IMG/VR virus record: IMGVR_UViG_3300017917_001342
Span: 434,001-498,000 of that record
Direction: 5' to 3' (one strand)
DNA: 64,000 bases
Shown here: in pieces, positions 47,667 through 63,848 of the stretch
Layout: every line of letters begins with the position of its first letter
Position numbering within the stretch: the first letter of the stretch is position 1
The notes under the pieces: generated by a model
Databases searched by the model: none
Told to the model about the DNA's origin: nothing
What the model saw: only the letters and a program-made list of their open reading frames with translations
Made by a program: the position numbers and the translations under genes

Positions 47667-49685
47667 TCAATTGTAATCTAATACGATTTTAAATTCTCCA
47701 GAGGTACTAGACCCTGGATTTATAAATGCTTTGACACTGGTTGTAGATAATACTGGATATGACAATGTTGTTGTGTATAGACCCACTGTTGTTGGATCAA
47801 TTAATGCACCGTCCATTAATAAACCATGCACAGTGTCAGTGCCAATTTCAATGTTGCTGCTGTTGTCGTTGAATGCCTGTATGATTTCGATGTTTAATCT
47901 AGTCAAAGTTTTAGTCGGCGCTAGTATACCAACTGTAACAGGACTAGTACTGAGATAACTGCCGGTTGCAGTAAAACTATTCACTAGTGTTGTATCACCA
48001 GATGTAGTGTTGCCAACGTTTTGACCATTCTGACTTAGCCCTAGTTGCATCCATACAGTCGGACCGGTATCAACTGCTACATATGCTTGGTTGTGACCAG
48101 CACCGTCGTTATAAACAAACGCAATAGCACCTCGTGTGGGTGTTAGTGCATTTCTAGCTGCAATATCTTGTACAAAGTATCCAAACGCAACACCAGTTGG
48201 ACCTGTTGGACCTGTTAATTGGCTTAGACTTGATATTGACCATGCGATAAGGTCAACCTGATCACCTGCAACAGACGGTGCATTTAATGTAACAGTTATA
48301 CCATCATCTGCTGTGTACTCAGTTGGCGGTAATTTGAGTCCATTTACATACACATCTATATATGGTGCTGTATATAGAGCATTGAATATAGTCTGGCCGC
48401 TTGTAGCGGTGTAGTTATATTCTTGGTATGCACCAACTGCGGCCGGACCAGTTGGACCTGTTACATCGCTGGCAGCACCAGTTGGACCTATAAAACCCTG
48501 TGGACCAGTAGGACCAGTTACTACGCTGTCTGCGCCAGTCGGGCCAATAGGACCAGTAGGACCGCCTAACGGACCAGTGGGACCTGTAGCACCTACTCCT
48601 GTTGCTCCCGTAGCACCAGTTGGTCCAGTAGGACCTGCTGCACCACCTACGCCTAGACGTTGCCAATTTGCATTACCAAGTGTAGGGTTAATACAAATGT
48701 ATGCAGTGTTTGTGCCGATGTCTATCCAAAGACTACCGTAACTGTAACCAAATGCTTCATCATCGTAGATAGTAGGCGGTACTACACTGGTAAAATTGTT
48801 TAGAGGTCCTGATAAACTGCCTTGTGATAATTTTACTGCGCTGGTATTGTTTATTTTTATAAACAATGGCATAGCAAAATTATTTGGTTTAACTGCGGTT
48901 AGTTTTCCCGGTACAGTGGTACTTAGATATAGGACATCACCTGGATTACCAGGCAGTGTAGGTAAATCATAAAGTACTTTGCCTTTTGGTTCCCAGCTAA
49001 AGTAATCATATCCAGGAATGCCTAATTGTCTTACAGTACCAATTACATTAACAGTTGAAATGTCATCAGCAATTGCCAGCGCATAGGTGCCATCAGATTT
49101 AAGATAGATCTGATCGCCTATATCAAATCCATTGCTGGGTTGTAAAACAGTTAACAGATTCTGTTTAATGTTTCTAGCATTGAATTTGCTAATAACATCT
49201 TCTAAAAATCCCGGATAGGGTTGAAGAAAACTGTTGTATAAGGTTAGTGTATGGAATACTGGAATGCCATCTTCGTCTAACGCAAAAATAAAACCAGGCT
49301 CACCTGTTGCTGCAACACCGTCTGGAGCAGAAAACTGCTCATATCTTCCGGTATCTTCTATTGTACAAACCAGTGTTGTGCTGTTAGTTAATAGTGGGTC
49401 TATTGCAATGATCTGGCAGCATTTACCAGTGGATGCTTCCGCATACCACATGCCTACTTTGATATCTAATGCATTATAAACATAGAGTTGTTCGGTACTG
49501 AAACTGCTGTGGTTTTGTTGAGTTACAGCAGCAGTCATAATAAAACGATATGGTTGCGGTGCTGGCCCGCCAGCCCACCATTGATCTTCTCCGTATATAG
49601 GACCTTCGTCTACAGGCCAATACCCATCAGGTACAATACTGATATTGTCTACATATAACGTAATGATAGGAAGTATAGATGCCAT
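47667..49685 (-). CDS. Collagen-like tail fibre/virion appendage protein (672 aa)
   Basis: Central (Gly-Pro-Thr)n tract, followed by the YTATSGQT...VYVNG fibre module. Confidence 0.75.
48438..48653 (-). repeat. Gly-X-Thr collagen-like coding repeat
   Basis: [13 protein letters not shown]... interrupted triplet repeat. Confidence 0.9.
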
Positions 49686-49698
49686 CAGTTAAATCCTA

Positions 49699-50763
49699 TC
49701 ATGCTGTGAATATCAGCGTCACCCAGAGATATCCATTGCCGGATGCAGGTACACCTGTATTACCAGGTGACAATGCATATAAACTTGTACTGTTAACAGT
49801 AGTACTCAGCGCAGAATAGCTACCAGTTGTAGCACCAGATGGTATTGTTTGTCTAAATGCTCCGGCTGGTAATACACCCGGCCCGCCTTGACAAGATATC
49901 ATAACAGGATAGAGATTTCTGTTGTGATTTACAGTGATCTGTGTATCGCCCAGTCTTGTGATTTGACCTAATGTGATATTTGTTAAATTGTCAACATAGT
50001 CAGATGGCAATATTACACCGTCTGCAAACAGCAATCTGAAATTGATAAGCGATGTTGCAGCAGGGCCTGTTGCACCAGTTGGTCCTACAACACTAGAACC
50101 AGTTGCACCAGTTGGACCTGTAATTGTGCTAGCTGCACCAGTTGGGCCTTGATCTCCCTGTGGTCCTGTAGCACCTTGATCACCTTGACTACCAGTAGGA
50201 CCAGTTGGACCGCCTAAAGGACCAGTAGGACCAGTTACAGTACTATCTGCACCTTGAGGACCAGTTACGCCAGTAGGACCAGTTGGACCTAACGGACCAG
50301 GTGGGCCCATTGCACCACCGCCGCTACCACCGGATGGTAATGGATTGCTAGGAGCAATTGCGCCATAATTTAAAAGTATTTGAAGAACTTCGCCTACTAG
50401 ATAGGAATTACTTGGTGGTGGCACCAAATAGGTTCTGTCAATTTTTGCACGAACCCAAACATAGTTGCCAGAGAAACTATATGCATAGTTACCTGTATCA
50501 CCAGTTTGTCCTGTGGGATATGCAGGGTCTAGTGGATATTGTACATATGGTGCAGTTGTACCAATTGGTATATCAAACCAGTCGAGTTCACCCGGGTCTC
50601 TAGCTAGACTGCCCTGAATGTATATACGACCAGTAAAATTGCTAAGCGATATACTAACGGTATGATTGTTACCGATAGTGTTATTGTAGCCAGCGCCTTT
50701 TTGTTTCTGGCCTGTTACATTGATTTGTTCGTTGGTAGTTGATAAAAGAATTACACTGATCAT
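49699..50763 (-). CDS. Collagen-like virion protein (354 aa)
   Basis: Central GPT/GAT/GPQ tract; late promoter upstream. Confidence 0.75.
50055..50320 (-). repeat. Gly-X-Thr collagen-like coding repeat
   Basis: [30 protein letters not shown]... Confidence 0.9.
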
Positions 50764-51036: not shown

Positions 51037-51369
51037 TTATACACGAGGTTTTGGTTTTCTACCACGTTTGCGGCCAGTTGATCTGTTACTGCCATCTGCA
51101 TTTATGTTGTAGACTTCTGCGTATCTGTCTAAACTCATGCCTTCTATACTGGTAATTAGATCCATTGATATTTTTATTGCTGCTGAGGTATACGGGTCCC
51201 TCAGCAGCAAAATGTATCCATCTACAGCACCGTCGATTTTATCTATTACCATATCTCGATAATGATGAGTGACTGTTCCATATTTAGAATGCTGTGGTAT
51301 TTTTGCTGTAACCACAGTGTCTTCAACTAATACTCCTGATAGAATCAATCGTTCTATAACTGCTGTCAT
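51037..51369 (-). CDS. Hypothetical protein with basic C-terminal GRKRGRKPK motif
   Basis: ATGA overlap with the clpA stop. Confidence 0.7.
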   Translation of the reverse strand: MTAVIERLILSGVLVEDTVVTAKIPQHSKYGTVTHHYRDMVIDKIDGAVDGYILLLRDPYTSAAIKISMDLITSIEGMSLDRYAEVYNINADGSNRSTGRKRGRKPKPRV

Positions 51370-53660: not shown

Positions 53661-54175
53661 TAGCGTCCCTTTGTCAAAATAGCTTTAAGCCTAGCGTTCT
53701 TAGCGGCTTTTTTCTTTGCTAGCATAAGCTTAACTGGTCCTACACGATCGTCAATCAGTATTCCTTGCAAATGGTCAAATTCGTGCAAGAATATTCTTGC
53801 CCACCATTCATCAAAGTCAGTTACCTGTTGATTACCGTGTTCATCTCGATACATGGCTTTGATACGTTTGCTACGTGGTATATCTAACACAAGCCCTGGT
53901 ATGCTCAAACAGCCTTCTGGTTGTACAGACATTTCGTCGCTGGCTTCTATTACCACAGGATTAATAAAAACGTAGTCTTGTCCTTCGAGACTGATTACAA
54001 ACAAACTGAGATCACTACCAACCTGCGGTGCAGCTAAACCAACTCCGCCATGTTTTTTAAGTGTATCAAACATGTCGCGAATCAGTGTTTGATGATTGAC
54101 AATATCTTCCGGTTCAATGACAGTGGTCTTTTGCCTAAGTATGGCATTTGGTTTTTTAACGATATCTAATATCAT
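53660..54175 (-). CDS. def: Peptide deformylase
   Basis: GVGLAAPQ, EGCLS, HEFDH. Confidence 0.95.
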   Translation of the reverse strand: MILDIVKKPNAILRQKTTVIEPEDIVNHQTLIRDMFDTLKKHGGVGLAAPQVGSDLSLFVISLEGQDYVFINPVVIEASDEMSVQPEGCLSIPGLVLDIPRSKRIKAMYRDEHGNQQVTDFDEWWARIFLHEFDHLQGILIDDRVGPVKLMLAKKKAAKNARLKAILTKGR

Positions 54176-55044
54176 AAAGTTGGTTCGCCTCTTTGTTGTG
54201 CTATTGTTTTGATTTGCTCAAACTGTTCAACATTTAAATCTTTTGGTATACTGATGTTAACAGTGATAAACAAATCACCGCGTTGTCTTGCATTGTTGTG
54301 TACAGGCATACCGTTTCCGGCTACTCGTAAAATTGCACCAGTCTGTGTGCCTGCCGGAATGTTAATAGACAGATGTGTACCATCTATAGCTGTTAGCTCA
54401 CGCTTTGTTCCAACTATTGCAGATAGTGCATCTAACTTCAATGCCATGTGCAGATGCGGTCCATCTCTCCTAAAAACAGGATGATCGTTGATACTCACTG
54501 TTACAAACAAATCACCTGGTGGTAAATTGTTGATAGACTTGTCACCGTAACCTTGATAGCGCAATCGTGTACCATGTTGCACACCTGCTGGTATGTTGAC
54601 AACTATGTTTCTAGATTGGCCATTTACTTCAAAGTTTATCGGTAAACTTTTACCTGCAAATGCTTCTTCTAATGTGATATTCAGAGTAAATTGATAGTCT
54701 TTGTTTTTTACAGGATGTTGTTGTCTAAATGCCTGTCCAAAGAACTGATTGATCATGTCGTCAAATGGGTTACCATGACCAAAATCAAATGTAAACCCAC
54801 CTGGTCCAAACGGCGATCCGCCATTCATATTACCAAACTTGCGCTGTTGGTCATATTGAGCACGTTTTTGCGGGTCGCTTAATATATCATTGGCTTCGTT
54901 TATTTGTTTAAACTTAGCTTCAGCATCGGGATTATCTTTGTTGAGATCCGGATGCCATTTTTTTGCGAGATTGCGATACGCAGTTTTTATTTCATCCTGC
55001 GACGCAGAGTCTGATAATCCTAAAGTACTATAATGGTCTGTCAT
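54172..55044 (-). CDS. dnaJ: Class II DnaJ (CbpA-like) co-chaperone
   Basis: J domain with HPD, G/F-rich linker, C-terminal GDL/LRVAGNGMP domains; no zinc finger. Confidence 0.9.
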   Translation of the reverse strand: MTDHYSTLGLSDSASQDEIKTAYRNLAKKWHPDLNKDNPDAEAKFKQINEANDILSDPQKRAQYDQQRKFGNMNGGSPFGPGGFTFDFGHGNPFDDMINQFFGQAFRQQHPVKNKDYQFTLNITLEEAFAGKSLPINFEVNGQSRNIVVNIPAGVQHGTRLRYQGYGDKSINNLPPGDLFVTVSINDHPVFRRDGPHLHMALKLDALSAIVGTKRELTAIDGTHLSINIPAGTQTGAILRVAGNGMPVHNNARQRGDLFITVNISIPKDLNVEQFEQIKTIAQQRGEPTL

Positions 55045-55127: not shown

Positions 55128-55841
55128 GTGGCAGAATCGAGAAAAATACCAACATTTTCAAGAGCAGTACCTATTCTGGATGCATTGTTAAAGTATCTAA
55201 CTAGAACTTCTCCATTGATGTTAGCAGTGCATTTAATTTATATCAGCACTGCTAGTATATTCATAAGCATGGCATATGTTGTTAGTTTCCATTGGGAAAG
55301 TCTAGTACGACTATACGAAGAAGCACACGATATACAATCATTTTCTGCCAATTTGAAAACATCTGTAGAAAACGACAACAAAATCTACGGACACCTCAAT
55401 ACTATTATCAGCAATTCTGGAGGTATGCGTGCTTATGTATATCGCTATCACAACGGACTAGCTGCAATTTCAGGTGTGCCTTTTTTCTTTCAAACTATGA
55501 CACACGAAGTAATCGCCAATGGTGCAACTCGTATTATACAATTTGAACAGCGTATACCAGCAAGCATACATATGGCAATTAACAATGATTTTGTAGAAGA
55601 TAAATGTGCTATTATCGAAAATGCAGATAAAGATCCAAGCAGCCAAAACTATTACTTCTATCAAAGCAAGAACGCTAAGTCATTGATACGTTGTCCAATT
55701 TATATGGAAAATGGTGATTTGTTTGGATTTGTTGGAGTTGACTTTGCAGATCATATTCCTTCTGATACTAAGAAAACTGTAGATGAAATCAAAAACACTG
55801 CTAAAGATATAGGTAGATTATTCGCTACTACTGCCAAGTGA
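55128..55841 (+). CDS. T4 gpT-like holin candidate (single TMD plus GAF-like periplasmic domain)
   Basis: Amphipathic N-terminus, one hydrophobic span, C-terminal RCPIYMENGDLFGFVGVDF similar to T4 T SCPYFNLDNIYAGTITMYW. Start reassigned from 54963. Confidence 0.55.
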   Translation: MAESRKIPTFSRAVPILDALLKYLTRTSPLMLAVHLIYISTASIFISMAYVVSFHWESLVRLYEEAHDIQSFSANLKTSVENDNKIYGHLNTIISNSGGMRAYVYRYHNGLAAISGVPFFFQTMTHEVIANGATRIIQFEQRIPASIHMAINNDFVEDKCAIIENADKDPSSQNYYFYQSKNAKSLIRCPIYMENGDLFGFVGVDFADHIPSDTKKTVDEIKNTAKDIGRLFATTAK

Positions 55842-55899: not shown

Positions 55900-56622
55900 A
55901 TGCAGATTCTTATACCAATGAGCGGAGCCGGCAAGAGATTTGCCGATATGGGTTATCAAAAACCAAAACCTTTAATAGAGTTTTTTGGTAAACCTATGAT
56001 AGAACATGTGTTGGAAAATCTAGGTGCAGACAACGATTACATTCTCTGTGTGCAAAAAGCACACTATGATGCAGACCCAACTCTGTTCGAAAGATTAAAA
56101 ACCAAAGTTAAAAGTTTATCTATAGTTCTAGTAAACGGTGTAACACAGGGTGCAGCAGAAACCTGTCTGCTTGCAAAACAGCTATTGGATCTAGATAAAC
56201 CGTTGTTCATTGCCAACTGTGATCAAATGATGGTATGGGATCAAACACATTTTGAAAATTGGTTTGCAGCAGAGAACCTGGATGGTGTTATGTTTGTGTT
56301 TGACAGCGACAGTACAAAAAACAGTTATGTAGAATTAGATAGCAACGGTATTGCTGTTAGAACTGCTGAGAAACAGGTTATCAGTCCCTATGCTACCAAC
56401 GGCATCTATGTATGGAAACGTGCAGGCGACTTTGTCTGGGCAGCCGAAAAGATGATTGCAGATGATATACGTGTAAACAACGAATTCTATGTGTGTCCTG
56501 TATACAATGAAAACATTGCAAGAGGTGATCGTATAGGCATCTACTATCCAACTGAGCATTGGCCTATTGGAACACCAGAAGACCTGGACATCTACATAAA
56601 GGCACACTATGAAACTGTTTGA
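55900..56622 (+). CDS. Sugar-phosphate nucleotidyltransferase (BcbE-like)
   Basis: IPMSGAGKRF...PKPLI, GAAET, ANCDQ, EKQVIS, NEFYV, GTPEDL. Confidence 0.85.
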   Translation: MQILIPMSGAGKRFADMGYQKPKPLIEFFGKPMIEHVLENLGADNDYILCVQKAHYDADPTLFERLKTKVKSLSIVLVNGVTQGAAETCLLAKQLLDLDKPLFIANCDQMMVWDQTHFENWFAAENLDGVMFVFDSDSTKNSYVELDSNGIAVRTAEKQVISPYATNGIYVWKRAGDFVWAAEKMIADDIRVNNEFYVCPVYNENIARGDRIGIYYPTEHWPIGTPEDLDIYIKAHYETV

Positions 56623-56941
56623 TCCTGACGAATTTAAAGGCGGATGGTTTATAGGAGATTTTGAACCTAGTATTTGGCGTACAACTGGTTTTGAAATAGG
56701 TTATAAACATCATATTGCAGGCGAAGCATGGCCTGCACACTACCATGAACACATGGACGAAGTTACTTTTCTTCTAGAAGGTACAATGCAAATTTGCAAT
56801 CAGACCATAACTGGTCCTATTATATTTTTAATAGGCCGTAATGAAATCGCTGACCCCGAATTTATAACAGACTGCAAGGTATTCATAATAAAAACTCCGT
56901 CTGTACCCGGAGATAAAGTTTTAATTGGAGATAAAACATGA
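56609..56941 (+). CDS. Cupin-fold protein (possible sugar epimerase/isomerase)
   Basis: GGWFIGDFEP, HYHEHMDEVTFLLEG cupin metal motif. Confidence 0.75.
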   Translation: MKLFDPDEFKGGWFIGDFEPSIWRTTGFEIGYKHHIAGEAWPAHYHEHMDEVTFLLEGTMQICNQTITGPIIFLIGRNEIADPEFITDCKVFIIKTPSVPGDKVLIGDKT

Positions 56942-58161
56942 GCGCAATTGACATTGTGAGAGACGAAAAAAATCTTGCAAAATATTTTTATGTAACATAC
57001 GACGTTGAAAGTACAAAAAGCGTATACGATGCTGCCTGGAATATTGCAGTCGGACAAAGTATAGGTAATCCAAATACTCGCAGTATTTGGGAAACTGACG
57101 ATATGATCGAAGCATACAGTGCTAAGATTTTACGCAATAGTAATTTTGAAAAGAAAAAAGGCAAAGTTGTAATTGCATACCCCAATGCTAATATTGACTG
57201 GGACACCGATGGTATTGCACAGCTATTGTGTATAGTACAAGGTGGTCAGGTTGATATTGACAGCATTAAAAAATGCAGAGTGTTGGATATAGAAATACAT
57301 CCTCAAATAATAGACAGCCACTTTAAAAAGCCTGCGCATGGTATAACAGGTATGCGCGAGTTCACTAACACCTATGGTAAACCAATGTTCGGCGGTATCG
57401 TAAAACCAAAAACAGGTATTACTCCTCAGGTACTGTTGGACATGACCAAAGAACTTGTAGAGGGTGGTGTTAACTTTATCAAAGAAGATGAAATTCTCAG
57501 CAACCCTGCTGTATGTAGATTGCAAGATCGAGTAGAACTTATCAGCAATTACATACAAGGTAAGAACGTAGTATACTGTTTCTGTATCAACAGTGATCCT
57601 GCATACGTAGTAGACCGCGCACGCTTTGTTGCACAGAATGGCGGTAATGGTGTGCATGTTAATATTTGGAGCGGATTAGGCAGCTATCGCAGTATACGCA
57701 ACGCAGACCTCGGTCTGTTTATACACTATCAAAAGAGCGGCGACAAAGTAATTACAGGTAAACAAAATCCCTTTGGTATTGAGTGGACAGTGCTTTGTAA
57801 ACTGGCTGCAATGTGTGGTGTAGACACTATTCATGCAGGTATGTGGGGCGGATATCTCAGCGACGACGAAGAGGAACTGCGTAAAACACTTGCTGTACTG
57901 CATGATAGAAACGTATTACCTGCACTAAGCTGTGGTATGCATCCTGGTATTGTTAACGCAACATCTGAGAAATTTGGTGTAGATTTCCTTGCTAACGTTG
58001 GCGGTGCTATTCACGGACACCCAGGTGGTACACTTGCTGGCGCTAAGGCTATGCGTCAAGCAATAGATAAGACTCCGGGTCCAGAATTCAAAACTGCAAT
58101 TGACAAATGGGGTTATGAAACCAACGGTGGTTCAATGCCGGAATGGGTATTGGAATTCTGA
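56938..58161 (+). CDS. RuBisCO-like protein (form IV RLP)
   Basis: GGIVKPKTG, FIKEDE, DTIHAG, LSCGMHP, VGGAIHGHP; the Lys334 position is Tyr. Confidence 0.9.
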   Translation: MSAIDIVRDEKNLAKYFYVTYDVESTKSVYDAAWNIAVGQSIGNPNTRSIWETDDMIEAYSAKILRNSNFEKKKGKVVIAYPNANIDWDTDGIAQLLCIVQGGQVDIDSIKKCRVLDIEIHPQIIDSHFKKPAHGITGMREFTNTYGKPMFGGIVKPKTGITPQVLLDMTKELVEGGVNFIKEDEILSNPAVCRLQDRVELISNYIQGKNVVYCFCINSDPAYVVDRARFVAQNGGNGVHVNIWSGLGSYRSIRNADLGLFIHYQKSGDKVITGKQNPFGIEWTVLCKLAAMCGVDTIHAGMWGGYLSDDEEELRKTLAVLHDRNVLPALSCGMHPGIVNATSEKFGVDFLANVGGAIHGHPGGTLAGAKAMRQAIDKTPGPEFKTAIDKWGYETNGGSMPEWVLEF

Positions 58162-58667
58162 TAGAAAGGTATAGGATTTTGCCATCTGTAATAATTGCAC
58201 ATAGAGGGTTGTTGGAGGGACCAGATGTAAATCTGCAGAATCGTCCAGATCAGGTGAAGAAAGCAATTGGCTTAGGCTTTCAAGTTGAAGTTGATGTGTG
58301 GTATATAGATGGCAAATGGTTTTTAGGACACGACGGACCTGAGCATAGTATAGATTGGCAGTTTCTAGCTGATCACAGCAATGACCTTTGGATACACTGT
58401 AAAAATCTAAATGCGTTCTTTGAGCTAAAAACTGATAGATCACATCAGTTAAATTACTTTTATCACGACAGTGACGCAGTTGTGTTAACAGCTAAAAACC
58501 ACGTTTGGACATATTTTGGTAAACGCGAAACCATGCATCGCAGCAGTGTATGTGTAATGCCGGAAGTTAGTTATGAGTGGGAAGAAATAGTACAAATGGC
58601 AACAAACAATCAATGGTTTGCCATTTGTACGGATTACCCAAGAAAGCTCAAGGAATGTCTCGCGTAG
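58143..58667 (+). CDS. GDPD/PI-PLC-like phosphodiesterase-fold protein (start uncertain, possibly TTG 58179)
   Basis: IIAHRG, GFQVEVDVW, FLGHD, LWIHCKN. Confidence 0.7.
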   Translation: MGIGILIERYRILPSVIIAHRGLLEGPDVNLQNRPDQVKKAIGLGFQVEVDVWYIDGKWFLGHDGPEHSIDWQFLADHSNDLWIHCKNLNAFFELKTDRSHQLNYFYHDSDAVVLTAKNHVWTYFGKRETMHRSSVCVMPEVSYEWEEIVQMATNNQWFAICTDYPRKLKECLA

Positions 58668-59317
58668 CACTTTGCTTTGCAGGTCTACCAAGAATGTCTA
58701 CAATCAGCACAGATAGCTGGCGTAGATTAATATCTCAACACCATACAGATGTTTTTGTACATACTTGGGCTGATAATGATCCGCAACAGCTACAGCAATC
58801 TATTGCTGCAACCTATGCACCAAAAGAATTGATTGTTGAACAACAACGTCAATTTGATACAGCTATCTATACTGATCGCATATGGGCATACCGTAGTTTT
58901 CCCAACAATGTATTGAGCATGTGGTACAGCATAGCACAGAGCCTACAGATGGCTGATAGATATGCTGCAAAATACAACATCACATATGATTATGTTTGTC
59001 GTGCTAGATTTGACTGGCACTGTAATCAATTTGATTTGCAACCATTTGATGGCTTAACAGTACCAGATGATCCCGGTTTAAGTGGACATCATTTTCAACA
59101 TAGAGGCCACTGGTATGTTGCACATAACGATCAATTTGGCTATGGCAGCATGAATGTCATGCGCGATTATGGTGAGACCTTTTATCGCATACCATGGTTA
59201 TATCAAATCGACAAAATAGACTTTTGCAGTGAATTATTCCTTACAACAAATATGATTACAAAAAAAATTCCTGTAAAATTACAAAAGGGATGGGTTTATA
59301 GGATGGTACGCGAATGA
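58655..59317 (+). CDS. Glycosyltransferase-like protein
   Basis: VALCFAGLPR, DVFVHTW, SMWYS, YDYVCRARFD, NDQF; start moved to the ATG at 58655 (AAGGA RBS). Confidence 0.5.
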   Translation: MSRVALCFAGLPRMSTISTDSWRRLISQHHTDVFVHTWADNDPQQLQQSIAATYAPKELIVEQQRQFDTAIYTDRIWAYRSFPNNVLSMWYSIAQSLQMADRYAAKYNITYDYVCRARFDWHCNQFDLQPFDGLTVPDDPGLSGHHFQHRGHWYVAHNDQFGYGSMNVMRDYGETFYRIPWLYQIDKIDFCSELFLTTNMITKKIPVKLQKGWVYRMVRE

Positions 59318-60387
59318 AAATAGCTGTATATACAATTGCACTTAATGAAATAAAACACTGTGAACGCTGGGCAGAATCTGTAAAAGATGCAGACTATCGA
59401 ATCGTTTTAGACACTGGTAGTACAGATGGTACAGTAGAAAAACTGCGCGAACTAGGTGTAACTGTATACGAACAGCAGTTTACACCTTGGCGTTTTGATG
59501 TTGCACGCAATGCTGCATTGAATTGTGTACCAGAAGATGCTGATATCTGTATAAGCCAAGACATGGATGAATTTTTAGAGCCGGGATGGCGTGCAAAAAT
59601 GGAAGCAGTTTGGCAGAAAGGTCAAACTACTAGATTGGCTTACACCTATGTATTTGATTATAGACCAGGTGGTAAGAATGACGGCTATCGTATGGATAAG
59701 ATTCATGCTAGACAGGGTTACGAATGGCGCAGGCCAGTGCATGAAACTGTATGGAGCACACTGAGTTACGAAAACATTGCAGAAGATCTGTCTATTGTAT
59801 TGAATCAAATACAAGACAGAAACAAAACAACTCGCAGCAACTATTTGCCATTGATGGCTATGGCCACAGCAGAAAATCCCAATGACAGCCAATTGAGCTT
59901 TTGGTATGGACGCGAGTTAATGTACGCAAATCAACATGAAGCTGCTATCACAGAATTGAAACGCTATCTTGATCTAGAAACCAGTCGTTGGCCAGTAGAA
60001 CGTAGCGAAGCTATGATTTATCTGTCTAGACTAACAGACAGCAGCAAATTTGACTATTTGCACAGGGCATTGATCTGTGCGCCAGAACGCAGACAGGTAT
60101 GGTTAGAACTTGCTAGATATTATTACAGTAAACAAGACTGGCATGGATTGCTATGGGCCTGTGGTAGCGGGCTTGAACACAGCCGCAGGGACAACAGCTA
60201 TCTTGATCATGCAGATGCCTGGGGCAATCAACTACACGATTTTGGAAGCATTGCAGCAGCTAACTTAAAATGGTACGAAAAAGCTGTGGAATGGTGCCAA
60301 TTAGCGATAAACATACAACCAACTGATGATAGATTGCGTGCAAACTTAAATTGGATGCAAAGCAAACTAGGAGAGATTTCAAAATGA
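59314..60387 (+). CDS. GT2 glycosyltransferase with C-terminal TPR domain
   Basis: IAVYTIALNE, LDTGSTDGT, FDVARNAAL, QDMDE, followed by TPR-like helices. Confidence 0.85.
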   Translation: MKIAVYTIALNEIKHCERWAESVKDADYRIVLDTGSTDGTVEKLRELGVTVYEQQFTPWRFDVARNAALNCVPEDADICISQDMDEFLEPGWRAKMEAVWQKGQTTRLAYTYVFDYRPGGKNDGYRMDKIHARQGYEWRRPVHETVWSTLSYENIAEDLSIVLNQIQDRNKTTRSNYLPLMAMATAENPNDSQLSFWYGRELMYANQHEAAITELKRYLDLETSRWPVERSEAMIYLSRLTDSSKFDYLHRALICAPERRQVWLELARYYYSKQDWHGLLWACGSGLEHSRRDNSYLDHADAWGNQLHDFGSIAAANLKWYEKAVEWCQLAINIQPTDDRLRANLNWMQSKLGEISK

Positions 60388-61448
60388 AAATAGCTATATA
60401 CGGTCCGGCAAAAAACGAATTCAAACATGTCGAAGCATGGTATGACAGTTGCAAAGATGCAGACATTATCTGCGTTGCAGACACTGGTAGTACAGATGGT
60501 ACACCAGAATTAATGCGACAACTTGGTGTACAAGTTACAGATGTACGTATATCACCTTGGCGATTTGATGATGCATTTAATACAGCAATGTATCTGGTGC
60601 CCGATTGGGTCGATGTTTGTATTCGATTAGACACAGACGAGCGTCTTGTAGAAGGTTGGAGAGCAGCGTTAGAAGCAGCATGGACACCTGAAACAACACG
60701 TTTACGTTACCCTTATGTATGGAATTGGAACCCAGATGGCACACCAGGCCGTACATGGTATGGCGATCGTATCCACAAGCGAGTTGGTTACAGATGGATG
60801 GGTGCAACACACGAAGGGCTTGTTAGCAGGTTGCCGGAAATTCAAACCTATACAGACACTGTGAAGATACATCATTTCCCGGATGTAAAAAACAAATCGG
60901 GCGATTTGCCATTGCTGTTAGAATCTGTAAAAGAGTGGCCGCATGATGCTAGAATCCGTGCTTACCTTGCTAGAGAATACATGTATGCTAGAAACTACGA
61001 GAAAGCAGCAGAAACCTACAAAGAATTCCTAGGAATGAGCTGGGACACTGCCGAACGCTGTCAGGCAATGACATCACTGGCACAAGCAGAACCAGAAAAT
61101 AAAATCTACTGGTTAAGGCAAGCTGCGTATGAAGTACCAACACACAGAGAACCTCTAGTATATCTTGCACAACACTATTACGACAAAAGTGAATGGCAAA
61201 AGTGTTATGAATATGCACACAAGGCTTTGGCAATTACCAGACATCCTATGGATTATACCTGCACACCGGAAGCATGGGGATGGCAACCACACGATTTGTT
61301 AAGCATTGCAGCATGGAATCTCAAGCTGTACAAAGAAAGTCTCGAACATGCTAAACTGGCATTGTCACATGCTACACATGATGTAAGGCTGCAAAACAAT
61401 GTCAAGCTCATTGAAGAATTTATAGCTAAGAATCTCAGTGACAGTTGA
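60384..61448 (+). CDS. GT2 glycosyltransferase with C-terminal TPR domain (paralogue)
   Basis: IAIYGPAKNE, DTGSTDGT, LDTDE, HEGL, TPR helices; start moved to the ATG at 60384. Confidence 0.85.
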   Translation: MKIAIYGPAKNEFKHVEAWYDSCKDADIICVADTGSTDGTPELMRQLGVQVTDVRISPWRFDDAFNTAMYLVPDWVDVCIRLDTDERLVEGWRAALEAAWTPETTRLRYPYVWNWNPDGTPGRTWYGDRIHKRVGYRWMGATHEGLVSRLPEIQTYTDTVKIHHFPDVKNKSGDLPLLLESVKEWPHDARIRAYLAREYMYARNYEKAAETYKEFLGMSWDTAERCQAMTSLAQAEPENKIYWLRQAAYEVPTHREPLVYLAQHYYDKSEWQKCYEYAHKALAITRHPMDYTCTPEAWGWQPHDLLSIAAWNLKLYKESLEHAKLALSHATHDVRLQNNVKLIEEFIAKNLSDS

Positions 61449-61463: not shown

Positions 61464-61640
61464 ATGAGAGCAACTGAATTCATAAATGAGTCAGGCGGAG
61501 CAGGCCGCGTTGTGCCAGGTGTGAATACCACACCTGATGTTGGACCGGATGAAATACCAAAGCAAGCTGCAAAGCTAGGTATGAAAACTGATAGAGACGG
61601 TAGACCGCCTATTGCTAGAACTGATGGGAAAATTGAATAA
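61464..61640 (+). CDS. 58-aa late protein (absent from the ORF track)
   Basis: Translates as MRATEFINESGGAGRVVPGVNTTPDVGPDEIPKQAAKLGMKTDRDGRPPIARTDGKIE*; bounded by a late promoter and a terminator. Confidence 0.8.
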   Translation: MRATEFINESGGAGRVVPGVNTTPDVGPDEIPKQAAKLGMKTDRDGRPPIARTDGKIE

Positions 61641-61641
61641 T

Positions 61642-61668
61642 AAAAAAGGGCGCCTAAGCGCCCTTTTT
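61642..61668. terminator. Bidirectional rho-independent terminator
   Basis: AAAAAA-GGGCGC-CTAA-GCGCCC-TTTTT between convergent genes. Confidence 0.9.
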
Positions 61669-62491: not shown

Positions 62492-62519
62492 AGTATAACA
62501 CAGTGTTGTTAGTTGTCAA
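62492..62519 (-). promoter_or_regulatory. Sigma70-type promoter
   Basis: TTGACA-16-TATACT with TGn extended -10; GGAG RBS downstream. Confidence 0.75.
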
Positions 62520-63303
62520 CTGCCAATGTTAAGTTGAAAGTACCGTCTGTAACAACAACATGCCCGTCGCCACATTCGACATGATAAGAAGGACCTAGCA
62601 GCGATTGCAATGCAATGCTTTCTCTTAGTGCAGAGTTACCTATAGTAAGTCCGAATACTGGCATCGGAGATGTGCCTTTGCGCCAATCAGTGATTTGATA
62701 CACTCTGTCGCGGCCTCTGTCAGAAATACAAATCCAGTCGCCTTTGATTTCGACACTTTCTACTAGCGAATGCTTTAAAAACTCACCAACTTGTTCGTAG
62801 ATTTTTACTTCACCTGCTGGTGCAACTTCAAGTTTATCTTCTGGTGATTCAACCGGCGGCTCAGTTGTGTCGCCTTCAATCTCAATTTTGTCTGGATTTA
62901 GATTAACGTATTCTCTAACGTTGTCTTCGGTTAGATCTAAAAACTCGTCGTCGCCGAGACCATAAGGCTTGAATTTCCATTTGTTGACAAATGTTAGATT
63001 TTTCAGTTGATTTGCCATGTCTATTAAACGTGACGGATAATCTTCGTTTCTGGACATTTCCACGAACACCATGTAGAATCCGTCATCTGTTGGTGCAGGA
63101 CTAACTTCTGTGTCCAGCGGTCGTATGCTGCTTTTTTCTACAAACACACTTAGATCAGCTGCTGGATTTTTATCTTTTACATAAAATCCGGTAACAATTA
63201 CTCTGCGATCATCGATCTTGCTTTCATATTCGTCAACTGAAATCAACGGCAATACTAGATGTTCTAATGCACCTCGATCAAGACCTTCGTTTATTCTTTT
63301 CAT
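62509..63303 (-). CDS. Hypothetical protein (264 aa)
   Basis: ISVDEYESK...FYVKD...PAADL...YMVFVE; ATGA overlap with the upstream gene. Confidence 0.75.
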   Translation of the reverse strand: MKRINEGLDRGALEHLVLPLISVDEYESKIDDRRVIVTGFYVKDKNPAADLSVFVEKSSIRPLDTEVSPAPTDDGFYMVFVEMSRNEDYPSRLIDMANQLKNLTFVNKWKFKPYGLGDDEFLDLTEDNVREYVNLNPDKIEIEGDTTEPPVESPEDKLEVAPAGEVKIYEQVGEFLKHSLVESVEIKGDWICISDRGRDRVYQITDWRKGTSPMPVFGLTIGNSALRESIALQSLLGPSYHVECGDGHVVVTDGTFNLTLAVDN

Positions 63304-63812
63304 TGCTGTGGCGCTCCATCAGCATCAACACCTGCTGCTGCTGCGTCGTCAAGTGTTTCAACGTCAACTTCTTCTTCGTATTGGTCCATGATTTTATTAT
63401 CAATGTTTTGAACAAACTTACGAGGTATAAGCATATCTATCAGCCAAATCTTACGTTTTTTCATCTTTGGCTTTTTAGTACCTGGTTGGTAGTCAGCTTC
63501 GCTTTTTACCTTGACAGGATATTTTTCCAGTGCAACACGATATGAAATTTTTGTACCGTGCATAAGAAGTCTTAGACCGCCTTCGGGGTCTGGCATTTTT
63601 TCGTATGGATATTTCAGTGTGATCTTTACCCAATACTGTTTGGTATAAGGGCCAGCTACAACTTCACCAAGTTTCCAATTTTTGTAAACGTACAGGTTGT
63701 TACCATCGAGGTAATCCTCAATGTCAATTAGTATATCTACAAGATCTTCAGAGTCCGTAATTCTACGGACTACTTCTGCTGCTTTTGATGTGTTAAATTC
63801 TTCGTGTGCCAT
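63300..63812 (-). CDS. Hypothetical late protein (170 aa)
   Basis: Start moved from 63833 to the ATG at 63812, 5 nt after TATAAATA; LYVYKNW...GEVVAGP...MPDPEGG. Confidence 0.75.
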   Translation of the reverse strand: MAHEEFNTSKAAEVVRRITDSEDLVDILIDIEDYLDGNNLYVYKNWKLGEVVAGPYTKQYWVKITLKYPYEKMPDPEGGLRLLMHGTKISYRVALEKYPVKVKSEADYQPGTKKPKMKKRKIWLIDMLIPRKFVQNIDNKIMDQYEEEVDVETLDDAAAAGVDADGAPQQ

Positions 63813-63817
63813 GTAGA

Positions 63818-63825
63818 TATTTATA
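63818..63825 (-). promoter_or_regulatory. T4 late promoter TATAAATA within a perfect 12-bp inverted repeat (63804-63835)
   Basis: GTGTGCCATGTA-8 nt-TACATGGCACAC. Confidence 0.75.
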
Positions 63826-63848
63826 CATGGCACACAAGTTTCGTTATA

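What the first reader, a model, noticed from the sequence alone, without database searches (positions are those of the whole stretch)
59314..61448. Tandem GT2-TPR paralogues as candidate O-glycosyltransferases for the GPT collagen fibres
Seen: two ~355-aa enzymes with the same architecture. Established (recall): GT2-TPR enzymes glycosylate flagellins and glycocins, and an adjacent GT2 glycosylates C. difficile BclA3 collagen. Inference: initiating and extending transferases, or one per collagen protein.
Basis: partly seen in the sequence, partly recalled or inferred. Interest (0 to 1): 0.6.

Follow-up and report, generated by a model that had tools for sequence, protein, structure and literature searches.

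The report
Phage collagen-fibre glycosylating enzyme pair
Two neighbouring genes of a 519-kb phage encode distant relatives of the one enzyme known to put sugars on bacterial collagen-like repeats, and across hundreds of phages and bacteria this enzyme family sits beside collagen-like fibre genes, so phages probably sugar-coat their own collagen fibres.

Summary
Genes at 59314-60387 (357 aa) and 60384-61448 (354 aa; true start is the ATG at 60384, not 60351) are 38% identical paralogues with a GT2/GT-A domain and a C-terminal TPR domain.

What they resemble:
- The only solved structures spanning both domains are the peptide glycosyltransferases SunS and ThuS (Z about 20-21).
- Both proteins are full-length remote homologues of C. 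difficile SgtA (profile probability 98.9%). SgtA is a 358-aa GT-A+TPR enzyme shown in vitro to add O-GlcNAc to Thr in the GPT repeats of BclA3.

Association with collagen-like genes:
- In 24 of 28 phage lineages a collagen-like gene lies in the flank. In 18 it is within 2.5 kb, against a 5-15% baseline.
- 47 of 80 bacterial species loci also carry one, usually immediately upstream on the same strand.

In this megaphage the pair is not directly adjacent to collagen genes (3.3 kb and 8.5 kb away). It ends a conserved operon with a sugar-1-P nucleotidyltransferase, a RuBisCO-like protein and a GT6-like third transferase.

The A/B duplication is ancient and conserved. The likeliest reading is two peptide-directed initiating transferases, with the TPR-less enzyme extending the glycan. 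There is no biochemical proof. I rate this a new variant of a known kind.

The parts
59314..60387 (+). GT_A: 357-aa SgtA-like GT2(GT-A)+TPR glycosyltransferase
   Evidence: ORF and translation. Pfam GT2 29.2 bits, above cutoff. phrog_13126 E 3e-88. AF2 pLDDT 94.5. SunS/ThuS are the top fold hits. BLASTP to the SgtA orthologue E 1e-15 over 349 residues.
60384..61448 (+). GT_B: 354-aa paralogue (38% identical to A); ATGA start/stop overlap with A
   Evidence: phrog_13126 E 4e-91. All invariant family columns are kept. BLASTP to the SgtA orthologue E 5e-13. It forms its own conserved clade, always 3' of the A-type gene.
58655..59317 (+). DUF7796 protein (220 aa from ATG 58655; the ORF rule gives GTG 58577): TPR-less GT-A fold, GT6-like; candidate glycan-extending transferase
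   Evidence: Pfam DUF7796 E 9e-10. AF2 pLDDT 93.6, pTM 0.91. Foldseek top hits are BoGT6a, ABO GTA/GTB and a3GalT, E 1.5e-6, TM 0.5-0.58. Start codon read.
58143..58667 (+). 174-aa conserved operon protein of unknown function (phrog_34507)
   Evidence: Conserved in related megaphage loci. Only weak GDPD/Menorin leads; no PDB sequence match.
56938..58161 (+). RuBisCO-like protein (form-IV type, 407 aa) inside the glycosylation operon
   Evidence: Pfam RuBisCO_large E 2.5e-39. Below every NCBIfam equivalog cutoff. Alignment to P. horikoshii RuBisCO 2cwx keeps the KPK and K-x-D-E sites but replaces H294, R295, H298 and K334. Conserved at this position in L005, L006 and L008.
56609..56941 (+). 110-aa conserved operon protein of unknown function (phrog_24762)
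   Evidence: Only a sub-threshold Pirin/cupin hint.
55900..56622 (+). Sugar-1-phosphate nucleotidyltransferase (240 aa): supplies an NDP-activated donor
   Evidence: Pfam NTP_transferase E 8e-11. PDB 4evw NDP-sugar pyrophosphorylase E 2e-16. phrog_3980 E 1e-61.
55128..55841 (+). First conserved gene of the operon, function unknown (about 237 aa from GTG 55128; the ORF rule gives TTG 54963, which overlaps the DnaJ gene)
   Evidence: Homologues of 217-226 aligned residues occupy the same position in L005, L006, L008 and L009. No family match.
61643..61668 (.). GC-rich palindromic hairpin with T-runs on both strands: bidirectional terminator that closes the + strand operon and the convergent - strand virion genes
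49699..50763 (-). 354-aa collagen-like fibre protein (G-P/A-T repeats): candidate acceptor
   Evidence: Translation. Pfam Collagen sub-threshold and PHROG tail-fibre families. Thr at 41% of Y positions.
47667..49685 (-). 672-aa collagen-like fibre protein: candidate acceptor
   Evidence: Translation. PHROG tail-fibre families. Thr at 60% of Y positions.

Best explanation
GT_A and GT_B are cytoplasmic, metal-dependent, inverting GT2 protein O-glycosyltransferases of the SgtA type. The GT-A domain binds an NDP-sugar through the DTGSTD loop, the DxD motif (DMD in A, DTD in B) and the W..P-V/T-H-E motif. The C-terminal TPR solenoid holds an unfolded collagen-like chain. Sugars are transferred to the Thr (or Ser) in the Y position of G-X-T triplets of the phage's collagen-like fibre proteins, before or during trimerisation. 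This genome has at least nine such proteins, with Thr at 41-81% of Y positions.

The two paralogues are an ancient, conserved pair. They most likely both initiate glycosylation but differ in donor sugar or acceptor context. The TPR-less GT6-like enzyme encoded just upstream would extend the glycan. The nucleotidyltransferase, the RuBisCO-like protein and the small unknown proteins of the same operon would make a phage-specific activated donor.

The likely benefit is stabilisation of hydroxyproline-free (G-P-T)n triple helices, plus a glycan coat on the fibres.

Shown here: gene structure, paralogy, fold, conserved catalytic motifs, homology to SgtA, the genomic association of the family with collagen-like genes, and operon conservation.

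Inferred: the acceptor, the residue modified, the sugars, the division of labour, and the benefit.
For: 1. Architecture and fold. GT2 plus TPR. AF2 model pLDDT 94.5. The only solved structures that span both domains are the peptide glycosyltransferases SunS and ThuS (Foldseek E 8e-16 to 4e-14 against 1e-7 or worse for the rest; VIA Z 21.1, 20.1 and 19.8). The best PDB sequence hits are SunS and the flagellin enzyme GmaR.
2. Homology to the characterised collagen-repeat enzyme. A 358-aa gene sits next to a BclA3 ORF that holds the exact published peptides. It aligns with A over 349 residues (E 1e-15), with B (E 5e-13) and with the family profile (hhalign probability 98.9%, E 2.7e-17, 337 columns). 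It shares the DTGSTD, ARN, DxD and W..P.HE motifs. SgtA's activity on GPT peptides is reported in PMC7157674.
3. Association in phages. 61 of 80 viral loci carry a collagen-like ORF, which is 24 of 28 lineages at 80% identity. In 18 lineages it lies within 2.5 kb and in 11 within 100 nt. In 48 of the 61 loci the nearest one is upstream on the same strand. Only 5-15% of the same records lies within 2.5 kb of a collagen hit in seven of the eight records with collagen hits (28% in one short 9%-complete fragment), giving a binomial p of 4e-9 or less at a 15% baseline (and 4e-7 even at 20%). In two records the only collagen cluster abuts the GT.
4. Independent association in bacteria. 47 of 80 species loci carry one. 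In Firmicutes 32 of 35 are within 150 nt. Mesorhizobium has a giant (G-A/S-T)n ORF divergent from the GT cluster.
5. Thr dominates the Y position in GT-linked collagens, 59% on average.
6. Both paralogues keep all invariant catalytic columns. The A and B clades are each conserved and always in the order A then B.
7. The operon supplies a nucleotidyltransferase and a third GT.
8. The own genome has only these two family members and at least nine collagen-like genes.
Against: - There is no biochemical or proteomic evidence for this phage or for any phage homologue.
- In this genome, and in the other A/B-bearing megaphage contigs, the pair is not adjacent to a collagen gene (3.3 kb and 8.5 kb here; 3.4 to about 19 kb in relatives). 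About 11% of this genome is as close to a collagen gene or closer.
- Identity to SgtA is only 23%, and SgtA's own catalytic and acceptor-binding residues are not mapped.
- Some family members have no collagen-like gene in reach. These include two viral fragments, 14 of 33 well-flanked Firmicutes loci, and one 2.4-Mb alphaproteobacterial contig. The family may therefore have other acceptors.
- In isolated jumbo phages (PaBG, Lu11, Alexandra, NCTB) the homologue lies 17 kb or more from the collagen genes.
- Databases name the family 'beta-1,4-glycosyltransferase' of LOS.
Confidence: 0.68

Rival explanations
1. The enzymes modify a host surface glycan (LPS/LOS core, O-antigen, capsule or teichoic acid) to block superinfection or alter receptors. 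This is the usual reading of phage GT clusters, and here the operon would make the donor sugar.
For: PHROG and GenBank name the family 'beta-1,4-glycosyltransferase' or 'LOS glucosyltransferase'. Reviews read jumbo-phage and pelagiphage GT clusters as capsule or O-chain modification (PMC7824862; PMC7029224). The GT-A domain alone resembles TarS, TarP, RmlT and WrtF, which are polysaccharide enzymes. The operon carries its own sugar-activation genes.
Against: Those names are transferred annotation, not tests. The polysaccharide enzymes match only residues 1-170 to 1-190, whereas SunS, ThuS and SgtA match both domains. TPR domains bind peptides. The AF2 model shows no membrane segment, only a soluble two-domain protein. 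The family-wide linkage to collagen-like genes in phages and bacteria is not predicted by this model.
Confidence: 0.1
2. They are protein glycosyltransferases, but the acceptors are other proteins. Candidates are capsid or tail proteins (as in glycosylated mycobacteriophage virions), other Thr/Ser-rich virion proteins, or host proteins such as flagellin.
For: The protein-directed fold applies equally. GmaR, a flagellin enzyme, is a sequence hit. Virion structural genes lie immediately downstream on the opposite strand (62509-63833). Some family members lack a nearby collagen-like gene. Phage-encoded GTs are taken to glycosylate capsids in mycobacteriophages (PMC11256854).
Against: The family's conserved neighbour is specifically a collagen-like gene, not a capsid or tail-tube gene. 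The characterised homologue SgtA acts on GPT repeats. The GmaR match covers the GT domain only.
Confidence: 0.13
3. Only one paralogue is the working transferase. The other is a non-catalytic or regulatory partner, for example a heterodimer subunit that presents the substrate or, like GmaR, has a second role as an anti-repressor.
For: B scores below the Pfam GT2 threshold. There are 19 fixed A/B differences, four of them flanking the catalytic H143-E144. The pair is always kept together and in the same order. GmaR is known to be bifunctional (my own knowledge, not tested here).
Against: B keeps every invariant column of the 29-sequence alignment, including DTGSTD, DxD and H-E. Single-copy enzymes suffice in most phages.
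Confidence: 0.06
4. The enzymes glycosylate phage DNA (hypermodified bases) to evade restriction.
For: DNA protection is a commonly proposed role for phage GTs (PMC10202952). The operon has a nucleotidyltransferase.
Against: No similarity to known DNA glycosyltransferases appeared in any fold or sequence search. The TPR domain and the SgtA/SunS kinship point to peptide acceptors. The collagen linkage is unexplained by this model.
Confidence: 0.03

Closest known systems
Clostridioides difficile SgtA (CD3350), the BclA3 exosporium collagen-like-region O-GlcNAc transferase (PMC7157674)
   Same: Same length (358 vs 357 and 354 aa). Same N-terminal GT-A plus C-terminal TPR layout. Full-length sequence homology. 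Shared DTGSTD, ARN, DxD and W..P.HE motifs. The family's gene lies beside a (G-P-T)n collagen-like gene. SgtA is metal dependent (Mn > Mg).
   Different: Only about 23% identical. Encoded by a phage, with virion fibres rather than a spore exosporium as presumed target. Present as an ancient tandem pair. Embedded in an operon with its own sugar-activation genes, a RuBisCO-like protein and a GT6-like enzyme. Not immediately adjacent to a collagen gene in this genome. Donor sugar unknown (SgtA uses only UDP-GlcNAc).
Glycocin S-glycosyltransferases SunS and ThuS (PDB 7msp, 7msn, 7msk)
   Same: They are the only solved structures matching both domains (Z 19.8-21.1). They are peptide-directed GT2 enzymes. 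SunS is the best PDB sequence hit (E 1e-4).
   Different: 17-20% identity. The window proteins score 21 bits against a 350-bit cutoff for the SunS equivalog model. SunS and ThuS modify Cys (and Ser) on small bacteriocin precursors and carry about 55 extra N-terminal residues. No glycocin genes were noticed here.
Listeria GmaR flagellin O-GlcNAc transferase (PDB 22ao)
   Same: A GT2 catalytic domain that targets a protein. Weak sequence hit, E 3e-3 for A.
   Different: The match covers the catalytic domain only. GmaR's target is flagellin and it doubles as an anti-repressor. There is no flagellar context in the phage.
Bacillus anthracis BclA: O-glycosylated (GPT)n collagen-like region of the exosporium (cited in PMC3368898; otherwise my own knowledge)
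   Same: Thr-rich G-P-T repeats carry O-linked oligosaccharides that include methylated and unusual sugars made by dedicated operons. Many phage loci place an O-methyltransferase between the collagen gene and the GT.
   Different: The initiating enzyme for BclA was not compared here. That system belongs to spores, not virions.
Thr(beta-Gal) stabilisation of hydroxyproline-free collagen ('Sweet is stable', Bann et al. 2000, cited in PMC3368898) and Mimivirus collagen modification by L230 (my own knowledge)
   Same: Glycosylation of collagen repeats as a stabilising or decorating step. Mimivirus gives a viral precedent.
   Different: Riftia is an animal system. Mimivirus L230 hydroxylates and glucosylates Lys with an unrelated enzyme. 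No bacteriophage case was found in the literature searched.
Mycobacteriophage virion glycosylation by phage-encoded GTs (mentioned in PMC11256854)
   Same: Phage-encoded transferases decorate the phage's own structural proteins.
   Different: The targets there are capsid and tail-tube C-termini, the enzymes are not GT2+TPR as far as tested here, and no collagen repeats are involved.

Membership tests
SgtA-type GT2+TPR collagen-repeat O-glycosyltransferases | N-terminal GT-A/GT2 domain with a nucleotide-binding loop and a DxD motif | tested here: met
   Pfam GT2. Invariant D33-T-G-S-x-D38, D83-x-D85 and H143-E144 in both A and B. The same motifs align with the SgtA orthologue.
SgtA-type GT2+TPR collagen-repeat O-glycosyltransferases | C-terminal TPR domain in a protein of about 358 aa | tested here: met
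   Eleven helices at 172-356 in the AF2 model. TPR Pfam hits. SgtA is described as GT (1-260) plus TPR (262-358) in PMC7157674.
SgtA-type GT2+TPR collagen-repeat O-glycosyltransferases | Full-length sequence homology to SgtA | tested here: met
   BLASTP E 1e-15 for A (23% identity, 349 residues) and E 5e-13 for B. hhalign probability 98.9% over 337 columns. The SgtA orthologue was identified through its BclA3 neighbour, which holds published peptides SML7 and SML8, and through its 358-aa length.
SgtA-type GT2+TPR collagen-repeat O-glycosyltransferases | Gene lies beside a (G-X-T)n collagen-like gene: family level | tested here: met
   24 of 28 phage lineages, 18 within 2.5 kb against a 5-15% baseline. 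47 of 80 bacterial species loci.
SgtA-type GT2+TPR collagen-repeat O-glycosyltransferases | Gene lies beside a collagen-like gene: this window | tested here: inconclusive
   The nearest collagen-like genes are 3.3 kb downstream (outside the window) and 8.5 kb upstream. About 11% of the genome is as close or closer.
SgtA-type GT2+TPR collagen-repeat O-glycosyltransferases | Transfers a sugar (beta-O-GlcNAc from UDP-GlcNAc for SgtA) to Thr/Ser of GPT-repeat peptides | not testable with these tools
   This needs enzyme assays or glycoproteomics.
SunS-family peptide S-glycosyltransferases (TIGR04195) | Score at or above the equivalog cutoff (350 bits) | tested here: not met
   21.4 bits for A and no hit for B. 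Fold-level similarity only.
SunS-family peptide S-glycosyltransferases (TIGR04195) | Two-domain GT-A + TPR fold | tested here: met
   VIA Z 21.1 (259 residues, rmsd 3.2) for SunS and Z 19.8 (298 residues, model 1-357) for ThuS.
Pfam PF00535 Glycos_transf_2 | Gathering score 23.3 bits | tested here: met
   A scores 29.2 bits. B scores 17.1 bits (below), but it is 38% identical to A, and all 29 aligned family members hit PF00535 at E <= 0.1.
PHROG 13126 ('beta-1,4-glycosyltransferase') | Profile match | tested here: met
   E 3e-88 (A) and 4e-91 (B), full length. The family name is an untested transferred annotation.
Bona fide RuBisCO (for the operon's 407-aa protein) | Complete catalytic set (K175, K177, K201, D203, E204, H294, R295, H298, H327, K334) | tested here: not met
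   In the alignment to 2cwx, H294 becomes Q, R295 becomes K, H298 becomes D and K334 becomes Y. The KPK and K-x-D-E sites and H327 are kept. It scores below all NCBIfam equivalog cutoffs. It is therefore a RuBisCO-like protein.
GT6 retaining glycosyltransferases (for the DUF7796 protein) | GT-A fold matching BoGT6a and the ABO transferases | tested here: inconclusive
   Foldseek E 1.5e-6, TM 0.5-0.58, 10-13% identity. No sequence-level match. Catalytic residues were not mapped.

The most novel reading that the evidence does not exclude
Thr O-glycosylation by SgtA-like GT2+TPR enzymes is a general, phage-encoded maturation step. It would substitute for hydroxyproline in stabilising (G-P-T)n triple helices of virion fibres across many phage lineages. 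Megaphages would have expanded it into a full pathway: two initiators, a GT6-like extender, and an activated donor made by a route that uses a RuBisCO-like protein. That would be a new biochemical role for the RLP family.
Probability: 0.25. Interest if true: 0.8.

Novelty: new variant of a known kind. Interest (0 to 1): 0.62.

Why it matters
- Bacterial and phage collagen-like proteins lack hydroxyproline, and how their Thr-rich triple helices are stabilised and decorated is largely untested. Only one initiating enzyme (SgtA) has been characterised, and only two papers in the searched library mention it with BclA3.
- Databases and reviews currently assign this phage GT family to LOS, capsule or DNA modification.
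- This work shows that the family has at least 479 viral and 436 bacterial relatives in the scans. It shows homology to SgtA and a systematic position beside collagen-like genes.
- That turns a vague annotation into a directly testable hypothesis: phages glycosylate their own collagen fibres. It bears on fibre stability, host recognition, antigenicity of phage particles, and the making of recombinant bacterial collagens.
- The linked RuBisCO-like protein offers a new genomic context in which to look for an RLP function.

Tried and rejected
No docking evidence exists either way.
There is no expression evidence, and read laying was not used.
- Nucleotide search of the operon against isolated phages gave only a 60-nt match.
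- The careful ML tree did not finish in 300 s. The quick IQ-TREE result with SH-aLRT support is what I cite.
- A first attempt to use a locus as the centre for a taxon search failed and was redone through a handle.
- PDB sequence searches for the DUF7796 and 174-aa proteins found nothing usable.
- ESM Atlas gave only self-family or weak GDPD/Menorin leads.
- Relaxed Pfam scans of the 110-, 174- and 292-aa proteins gave nothing beyond a sub-threshold Pirin hint.
- A call on a mis-set small-ORF coordinate failed.
- Considered and rejected: a bona fide phage RuBisCO (catalytic residues missing) and a recent duplication of A and B (they form old separate clades).
- Weak lead, not relied on: 21 of 29 family members give sub-threshold hits to the TPR of collagen prolyl 4-hydroxylase (PF23558). 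TPR families cross-match, and P0001 itself does not hit.
- Not done: a phyletic baseline for collagen genes in jumbo phages that lack the GT, and the reverse frequency (how many phage collagen genes have such a GT nearby).


Full report
**Observation**

The two ORFs are real. Gene A is 59314-60387 (357 aa). Gene B is listed from TTG 60351, but it almost certainly starts at ATG 60384. That ATG follows a GGAG site and overlaps A's stop as ATGA, giving 354 aa. The proteins align end to end at 38% identity, E 8e-72.

A passes the Pfam GT2 gathering score. B falls below it. Both have weak C-terminal TPR hits, and both match phrog_13126 at about 1e-90.

**Genome context**

The window is bases 434001-498000 of a 518,643-bp IMG/VR virus record with direct terminal repeats, judged complete by CheckV. 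It is a megaphage. The genome holds only these two members of the GT family.

It holds at least nine collagen-like ORFs in five clusters. In between are ClpB-like, peptide deformylase and DnaJ genes and five operon genes. The nearest collagen-like gene (1440 aa, followed by one of 2634 aa) starts 3.3 kb downstream of GT_B, just past the window end. About 11% of this genome is as close to a collagen gene or closer, so position in this genome alone proves little.

**What the proteins are**

The AF2 model of A, built from a 29-sequence alignment (pLDDT 94.5, pTM 0.83), is a GT-A domain at residues 1-165 followed by an all-helical TPR solenoid at 172-356.

- Foldseek puts the glycocin S-glycosyltransferases ThuS and SunS first, at E 8e-16 to 4e-14. 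Everything else is at 1e-7 or worse and covers one domain only.
- VIA-align gives Z 21.1 and 20.1 for SunS and Z 19.8 for ThuS, the ThuS alignment spanning residues 1-357.
- By sequence, the best PDB hits are SunS (E 1e-4) and the flagellin enzyme GmaR (E 3e-3).
- The alignment's invariant columns are present in both A and B: the DTGSTD nucleotide loop, R60/D62/N66, the DxD motif, H131/R133 and H143-E144. A set of polar TPR residues is also invariant.

**Link to the characterised enzyme**

PMC7157674 describes C. difficile SgtA as a 358-aa protein with a GT-A domain and C-terminal TPRs, encoded immediately upstream of bclA3. In vitro it transfers beta-O-GlcNAc from UDP-GlcNAc to Thr (and Ser) of peptides from the GPT collagen-like region of BclA3, and it is Mn/Mg dependent.

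A search of 401 genomes of one clostridial order with A found a group of 360-366-aa open frames matching over the full length at about 25% identity. Next to each is a GPT-rich ORF. In L184 that ORF contains the paper's BclA3 peptides SML7 and SML8 exactly, and the adjacent gene encodes 358 aa.

This SgtA orthologue aligns with A at E 1e-15 (23% identity, 349 residues) and with B at E 5e-13. It aligns with the family profile at hhalign probability 98.9%, E 2.7e-17, over 337 columns. It shares the DTGSTD, ARN, DxD and W..P.HE motifs. The window proteins are therefore remote but full-length homologues of the only enzyme shown to glycosylate collagen-like repeats in bacteria.

**Family-wide association with collagen-like genes**

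*Phages.* A scan of IMG/VR found at least 479 relatives, and 80 loci with up to 10-kb flanks were analysed.

- 61 of the 80 loci carry a collagen-like ORF (at least 8 G-X-Y triplets). In 48 of these 61 the nearest one is upstream on the same strand.
- After dereplication at 80% identity there are 28 lineages. In 24 a collagen-like ORF lies in the flank, in 18 within 2.5 kb, and in 11 within 100 nt.
- Most negative loci are cut off within 3 kb upstream.

*Baseline.* Whole-record Pfam Collagen scans of ten of these contigs give the baseline. In seven of the eight records that have collagen hits, 5-15% of the record lies within 2.5 kb of a hit (28% in G008, a short 9%-complete fragment). That gives a binomial p of 4e-9 or less for 18 of 28 at a 15% baseline, and about 4e-7 even at 20%. 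Fisher's combined p over the ten records is 0.013. In two records (94.6 kb and 64 kb) the only collagen cluster abuts the GT. Two fragments have no collagen at all.

*Isolated phages.* Five isolated phages with a homologue all encode collagen-like proteins. The genes are adjacent in Actinomycetia phage DSL-LC01 and 17 kb or more apart in PaBG, Lu11, Alexandra and NCTB.

*Bacteria.* In species-representative bacterial genomes, 47 of 80 loci have a collagen-like ORF.

- In Firmicutes, 32 of 35 are within 150 nt, and 29 are upstream on the same strand.
- In Mesorhizobium the GT sits in a multi-GT/methyltransferase cluster divergent from a giant, uncalled (G-A/S-T)n ORF.

*Composition.* Thr occupies on average 59% of Y positions in the GT-linked collagens and 41-81% in this genome's own. 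By contrast, the non-glycosylated E. coli prophage collagens use charged triplets such as GPK and GER (PMC3368898).

**The pair and its operon**

In a quick ML tree, A groups with the first gene and B with the second gene of tandem pairs in other large viral contigs (SH-aLRT 98 and 100). Both lie inside a 14-sequence clade whose outgroup member L066_2 lies 67 nt from a 1410-aa collagen gene. The duplication is therefore old and the order A then B is conserved.

The whole module is conserved down to 35-45% identity. On the - strand it is ClpB, (PDF), DnaJ. On the + strand it is an unknown protein, the nucleotidyltransferase, a 110-aa protein, (the RLP), the 174-aa and DUF7796 proteins, then GT_A and GT_B. 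It ends at a bidirectional hairpin terminator at 61643-61668.

- The DUF7796 protein models confidently (pLDDT 93.6). Its fold matches GT6 retaining transferases such as BoGT6a and the ABO enzymes (E 1.5e-6, TM up to 0.58). It has no TPR domain.
- The nucleotidyltransferase resembles NDP-sugar pyrophosphorylases.
- The 407-aa RuBisCO homologue keeps the KPK and K-x-D-E sites and H327 but has lost H294, R295, H298 and K334. It is a RuBisCO-like protein, not a carboxylase. It has more than 2600 unnamed metagenomic relatives, many on contigs of the same lengths as those that carry the GT homologues.
- A and B differ at 19 clade-fixed positions. Nine are in the GT domain, four of them flanking H143-E144, and ten are in the TPR.

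**Mechanism proposed**

Shown here: two catalytically intact SgtA-like GT2+TPR paralogues, a conserved operon with a sugar-activating enzyme and a third GT, and the family's linkage to G-X-T collagen genes.

Inferred:
- The TPR holds an unfolded collagen-like chain.
- The GT-A domain transfers a sugar with inversion to Y-position Thr.
- A and B both initiate, with different donor or acceptor preferences.
- The GT6-like enzyme extends the glycan.
- The operon makes a phage-specific donor.

The benefit would be stabilisation of a hydroxyproline-free triple helix, as known for Thr(Gal) collagen peptides (Bann et al. 2000, cited in PMC3368898), plus a glycan coat on the fibres. In many smaller phages an O-methyltransferase gene lies between the collagen gene and the GT, or is fused to the GT. 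This recalls the methylated sugars of BclA glycans (my own knowledge).

**Rivals**

- Host LPS or capsule modification is the standard annotation. It rests on transferred names and on similarity of the catalytic domain alone, and it does not explain the TPR, the SgtA/SunS kinship or the collagen linkage.
- Other protein acceptors remain possible for some family members that lack nearby collagen genes.
- One paralogue might be a non-catalytic partner. This could not be tested.
- DNA glycosylation has no support.

**Novelty and limits**

I found no paper linking phage GT2+TPR enzymes to collagen-like fibres. Phage papers that mention both features assign the GTs to DNA or LPS modification.

The enzymes belong to a known kind (SgtA-type). 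The setting is new: virion fibres, a conserved initiator pair, a dedicated donor operon with an RLP, and a GT6-like extender.

All functional statements are inference from sequence, fold and gene neighbourhood. The tree is a quick search. Expression and complex prediction could not be obtained.

Noticed in passing
window 56938-58161 (+): A RuBisCO-like protein sits inside the glycosylation operon. It keeps the KPK and K-x-D-E sites but lacks H294, R295, H298 and K334. It is conserved at this position in related megaphage contigs and has more than 2600 unnamed metagenomic relatives. No known RLP function involves nucleotide-sugar or glycan synthesis.
   Followed up: partly
window 58655-59317 (+): The DUF7796 protein, a family found mostly in viruses, models as a GT-A glycosyltransferase closest to GT6 enzymes (BoGT6a, ABO transferases). 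This suggests a function for the Pfam DUF.
   Followed up: partly
window 51366-55044 (-): ClpB/ClpA-like AAA+ chaperone (764 aa), peptide deformylase and DnaJ genes form a block divergent from the sugar operon. The ClpB-DnaJ block is conserved next to it in relatives (the deformylase only in the two closest), down to 40-50% identity. It may be a protein-maturation island serving the giant fibres.
   Followed up: partly
G000:C1:498724-511402 (3.3 kb past GT_B, beyond the window end): Two giant collagen-like proteins (1440 and 2634 aa, Thr at 75-81% of Y positions) are the collagen genes nearest to the GT pair. The same arrangement occurs in L005 and L006.
   Followed up: partly
window 3-8909 (+): An open frame of at least 2968 aa runs off the 5' end of the window. 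It was not examined.
   Followed up: no
L085:1-4812 (-) (Mesorhizobium CP083956): A 1604-aa ORF with 371 G-A/S-T triplets (Thr at 99% of Y positions) and a globular N-terminus is not in the record's gene calls. It lies divergent from a cluster holding a 1246-aa TPR+GT protein, the GT2-TPR homologue, a GT25/GT1 protein and a methyltransferase.
   Followed up: partly
L013:9414-9998, L018:9415-9999, L028:9416-9991, L081:2992-5126: In smaller phages a SAM-dependent O-methyltransferase-like gene (Methyltransf_24/_3) lies immediately upstream of the GT in the loci checked, and between the collagen gene and the GT in L013, L028 and L081. In L081 a further methyltransferase domain is fused to the GT-TPR protein itself. 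A subtilase gene follows the collagen gene in L013.
   Followed up: partly
L001:6433-8004 (Actinomycetia phage DSL-LC01): A gene annotated 'tryptophan halogenase' (FAD-dependent) lies between the two collagen genes and the GT2-TPR homologue. It may mark a further modification of the fibre.
   Followed up: no
alignment A1 (family of GT_A and GT_B): 21 of 29 family members give sub-threshold Pfam hits to PF23558, the TPR peptide-substrate-binding domain of collagen prolyl 4-hydroxylase. One member hits the leprecan TPR. TPR families cross-match, so this is a lead only.
   Followed up: no
L173 (G011), L172 (G105), L171 (G236); L063 and L078: Tandem duplication of the GT2-TPR gene has happened repeatedly. 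There are pairs in several Firmicutes genomes and triplets in two viral contigs, each next to collagen-like genes.
   Followed up: no
window 61465-61642 (+): A short ORF-like stretch begins with an ATG at about 61465, between GT_B and the terminator hairpin. Its frame and coding status were not settled.
   Followed up: no
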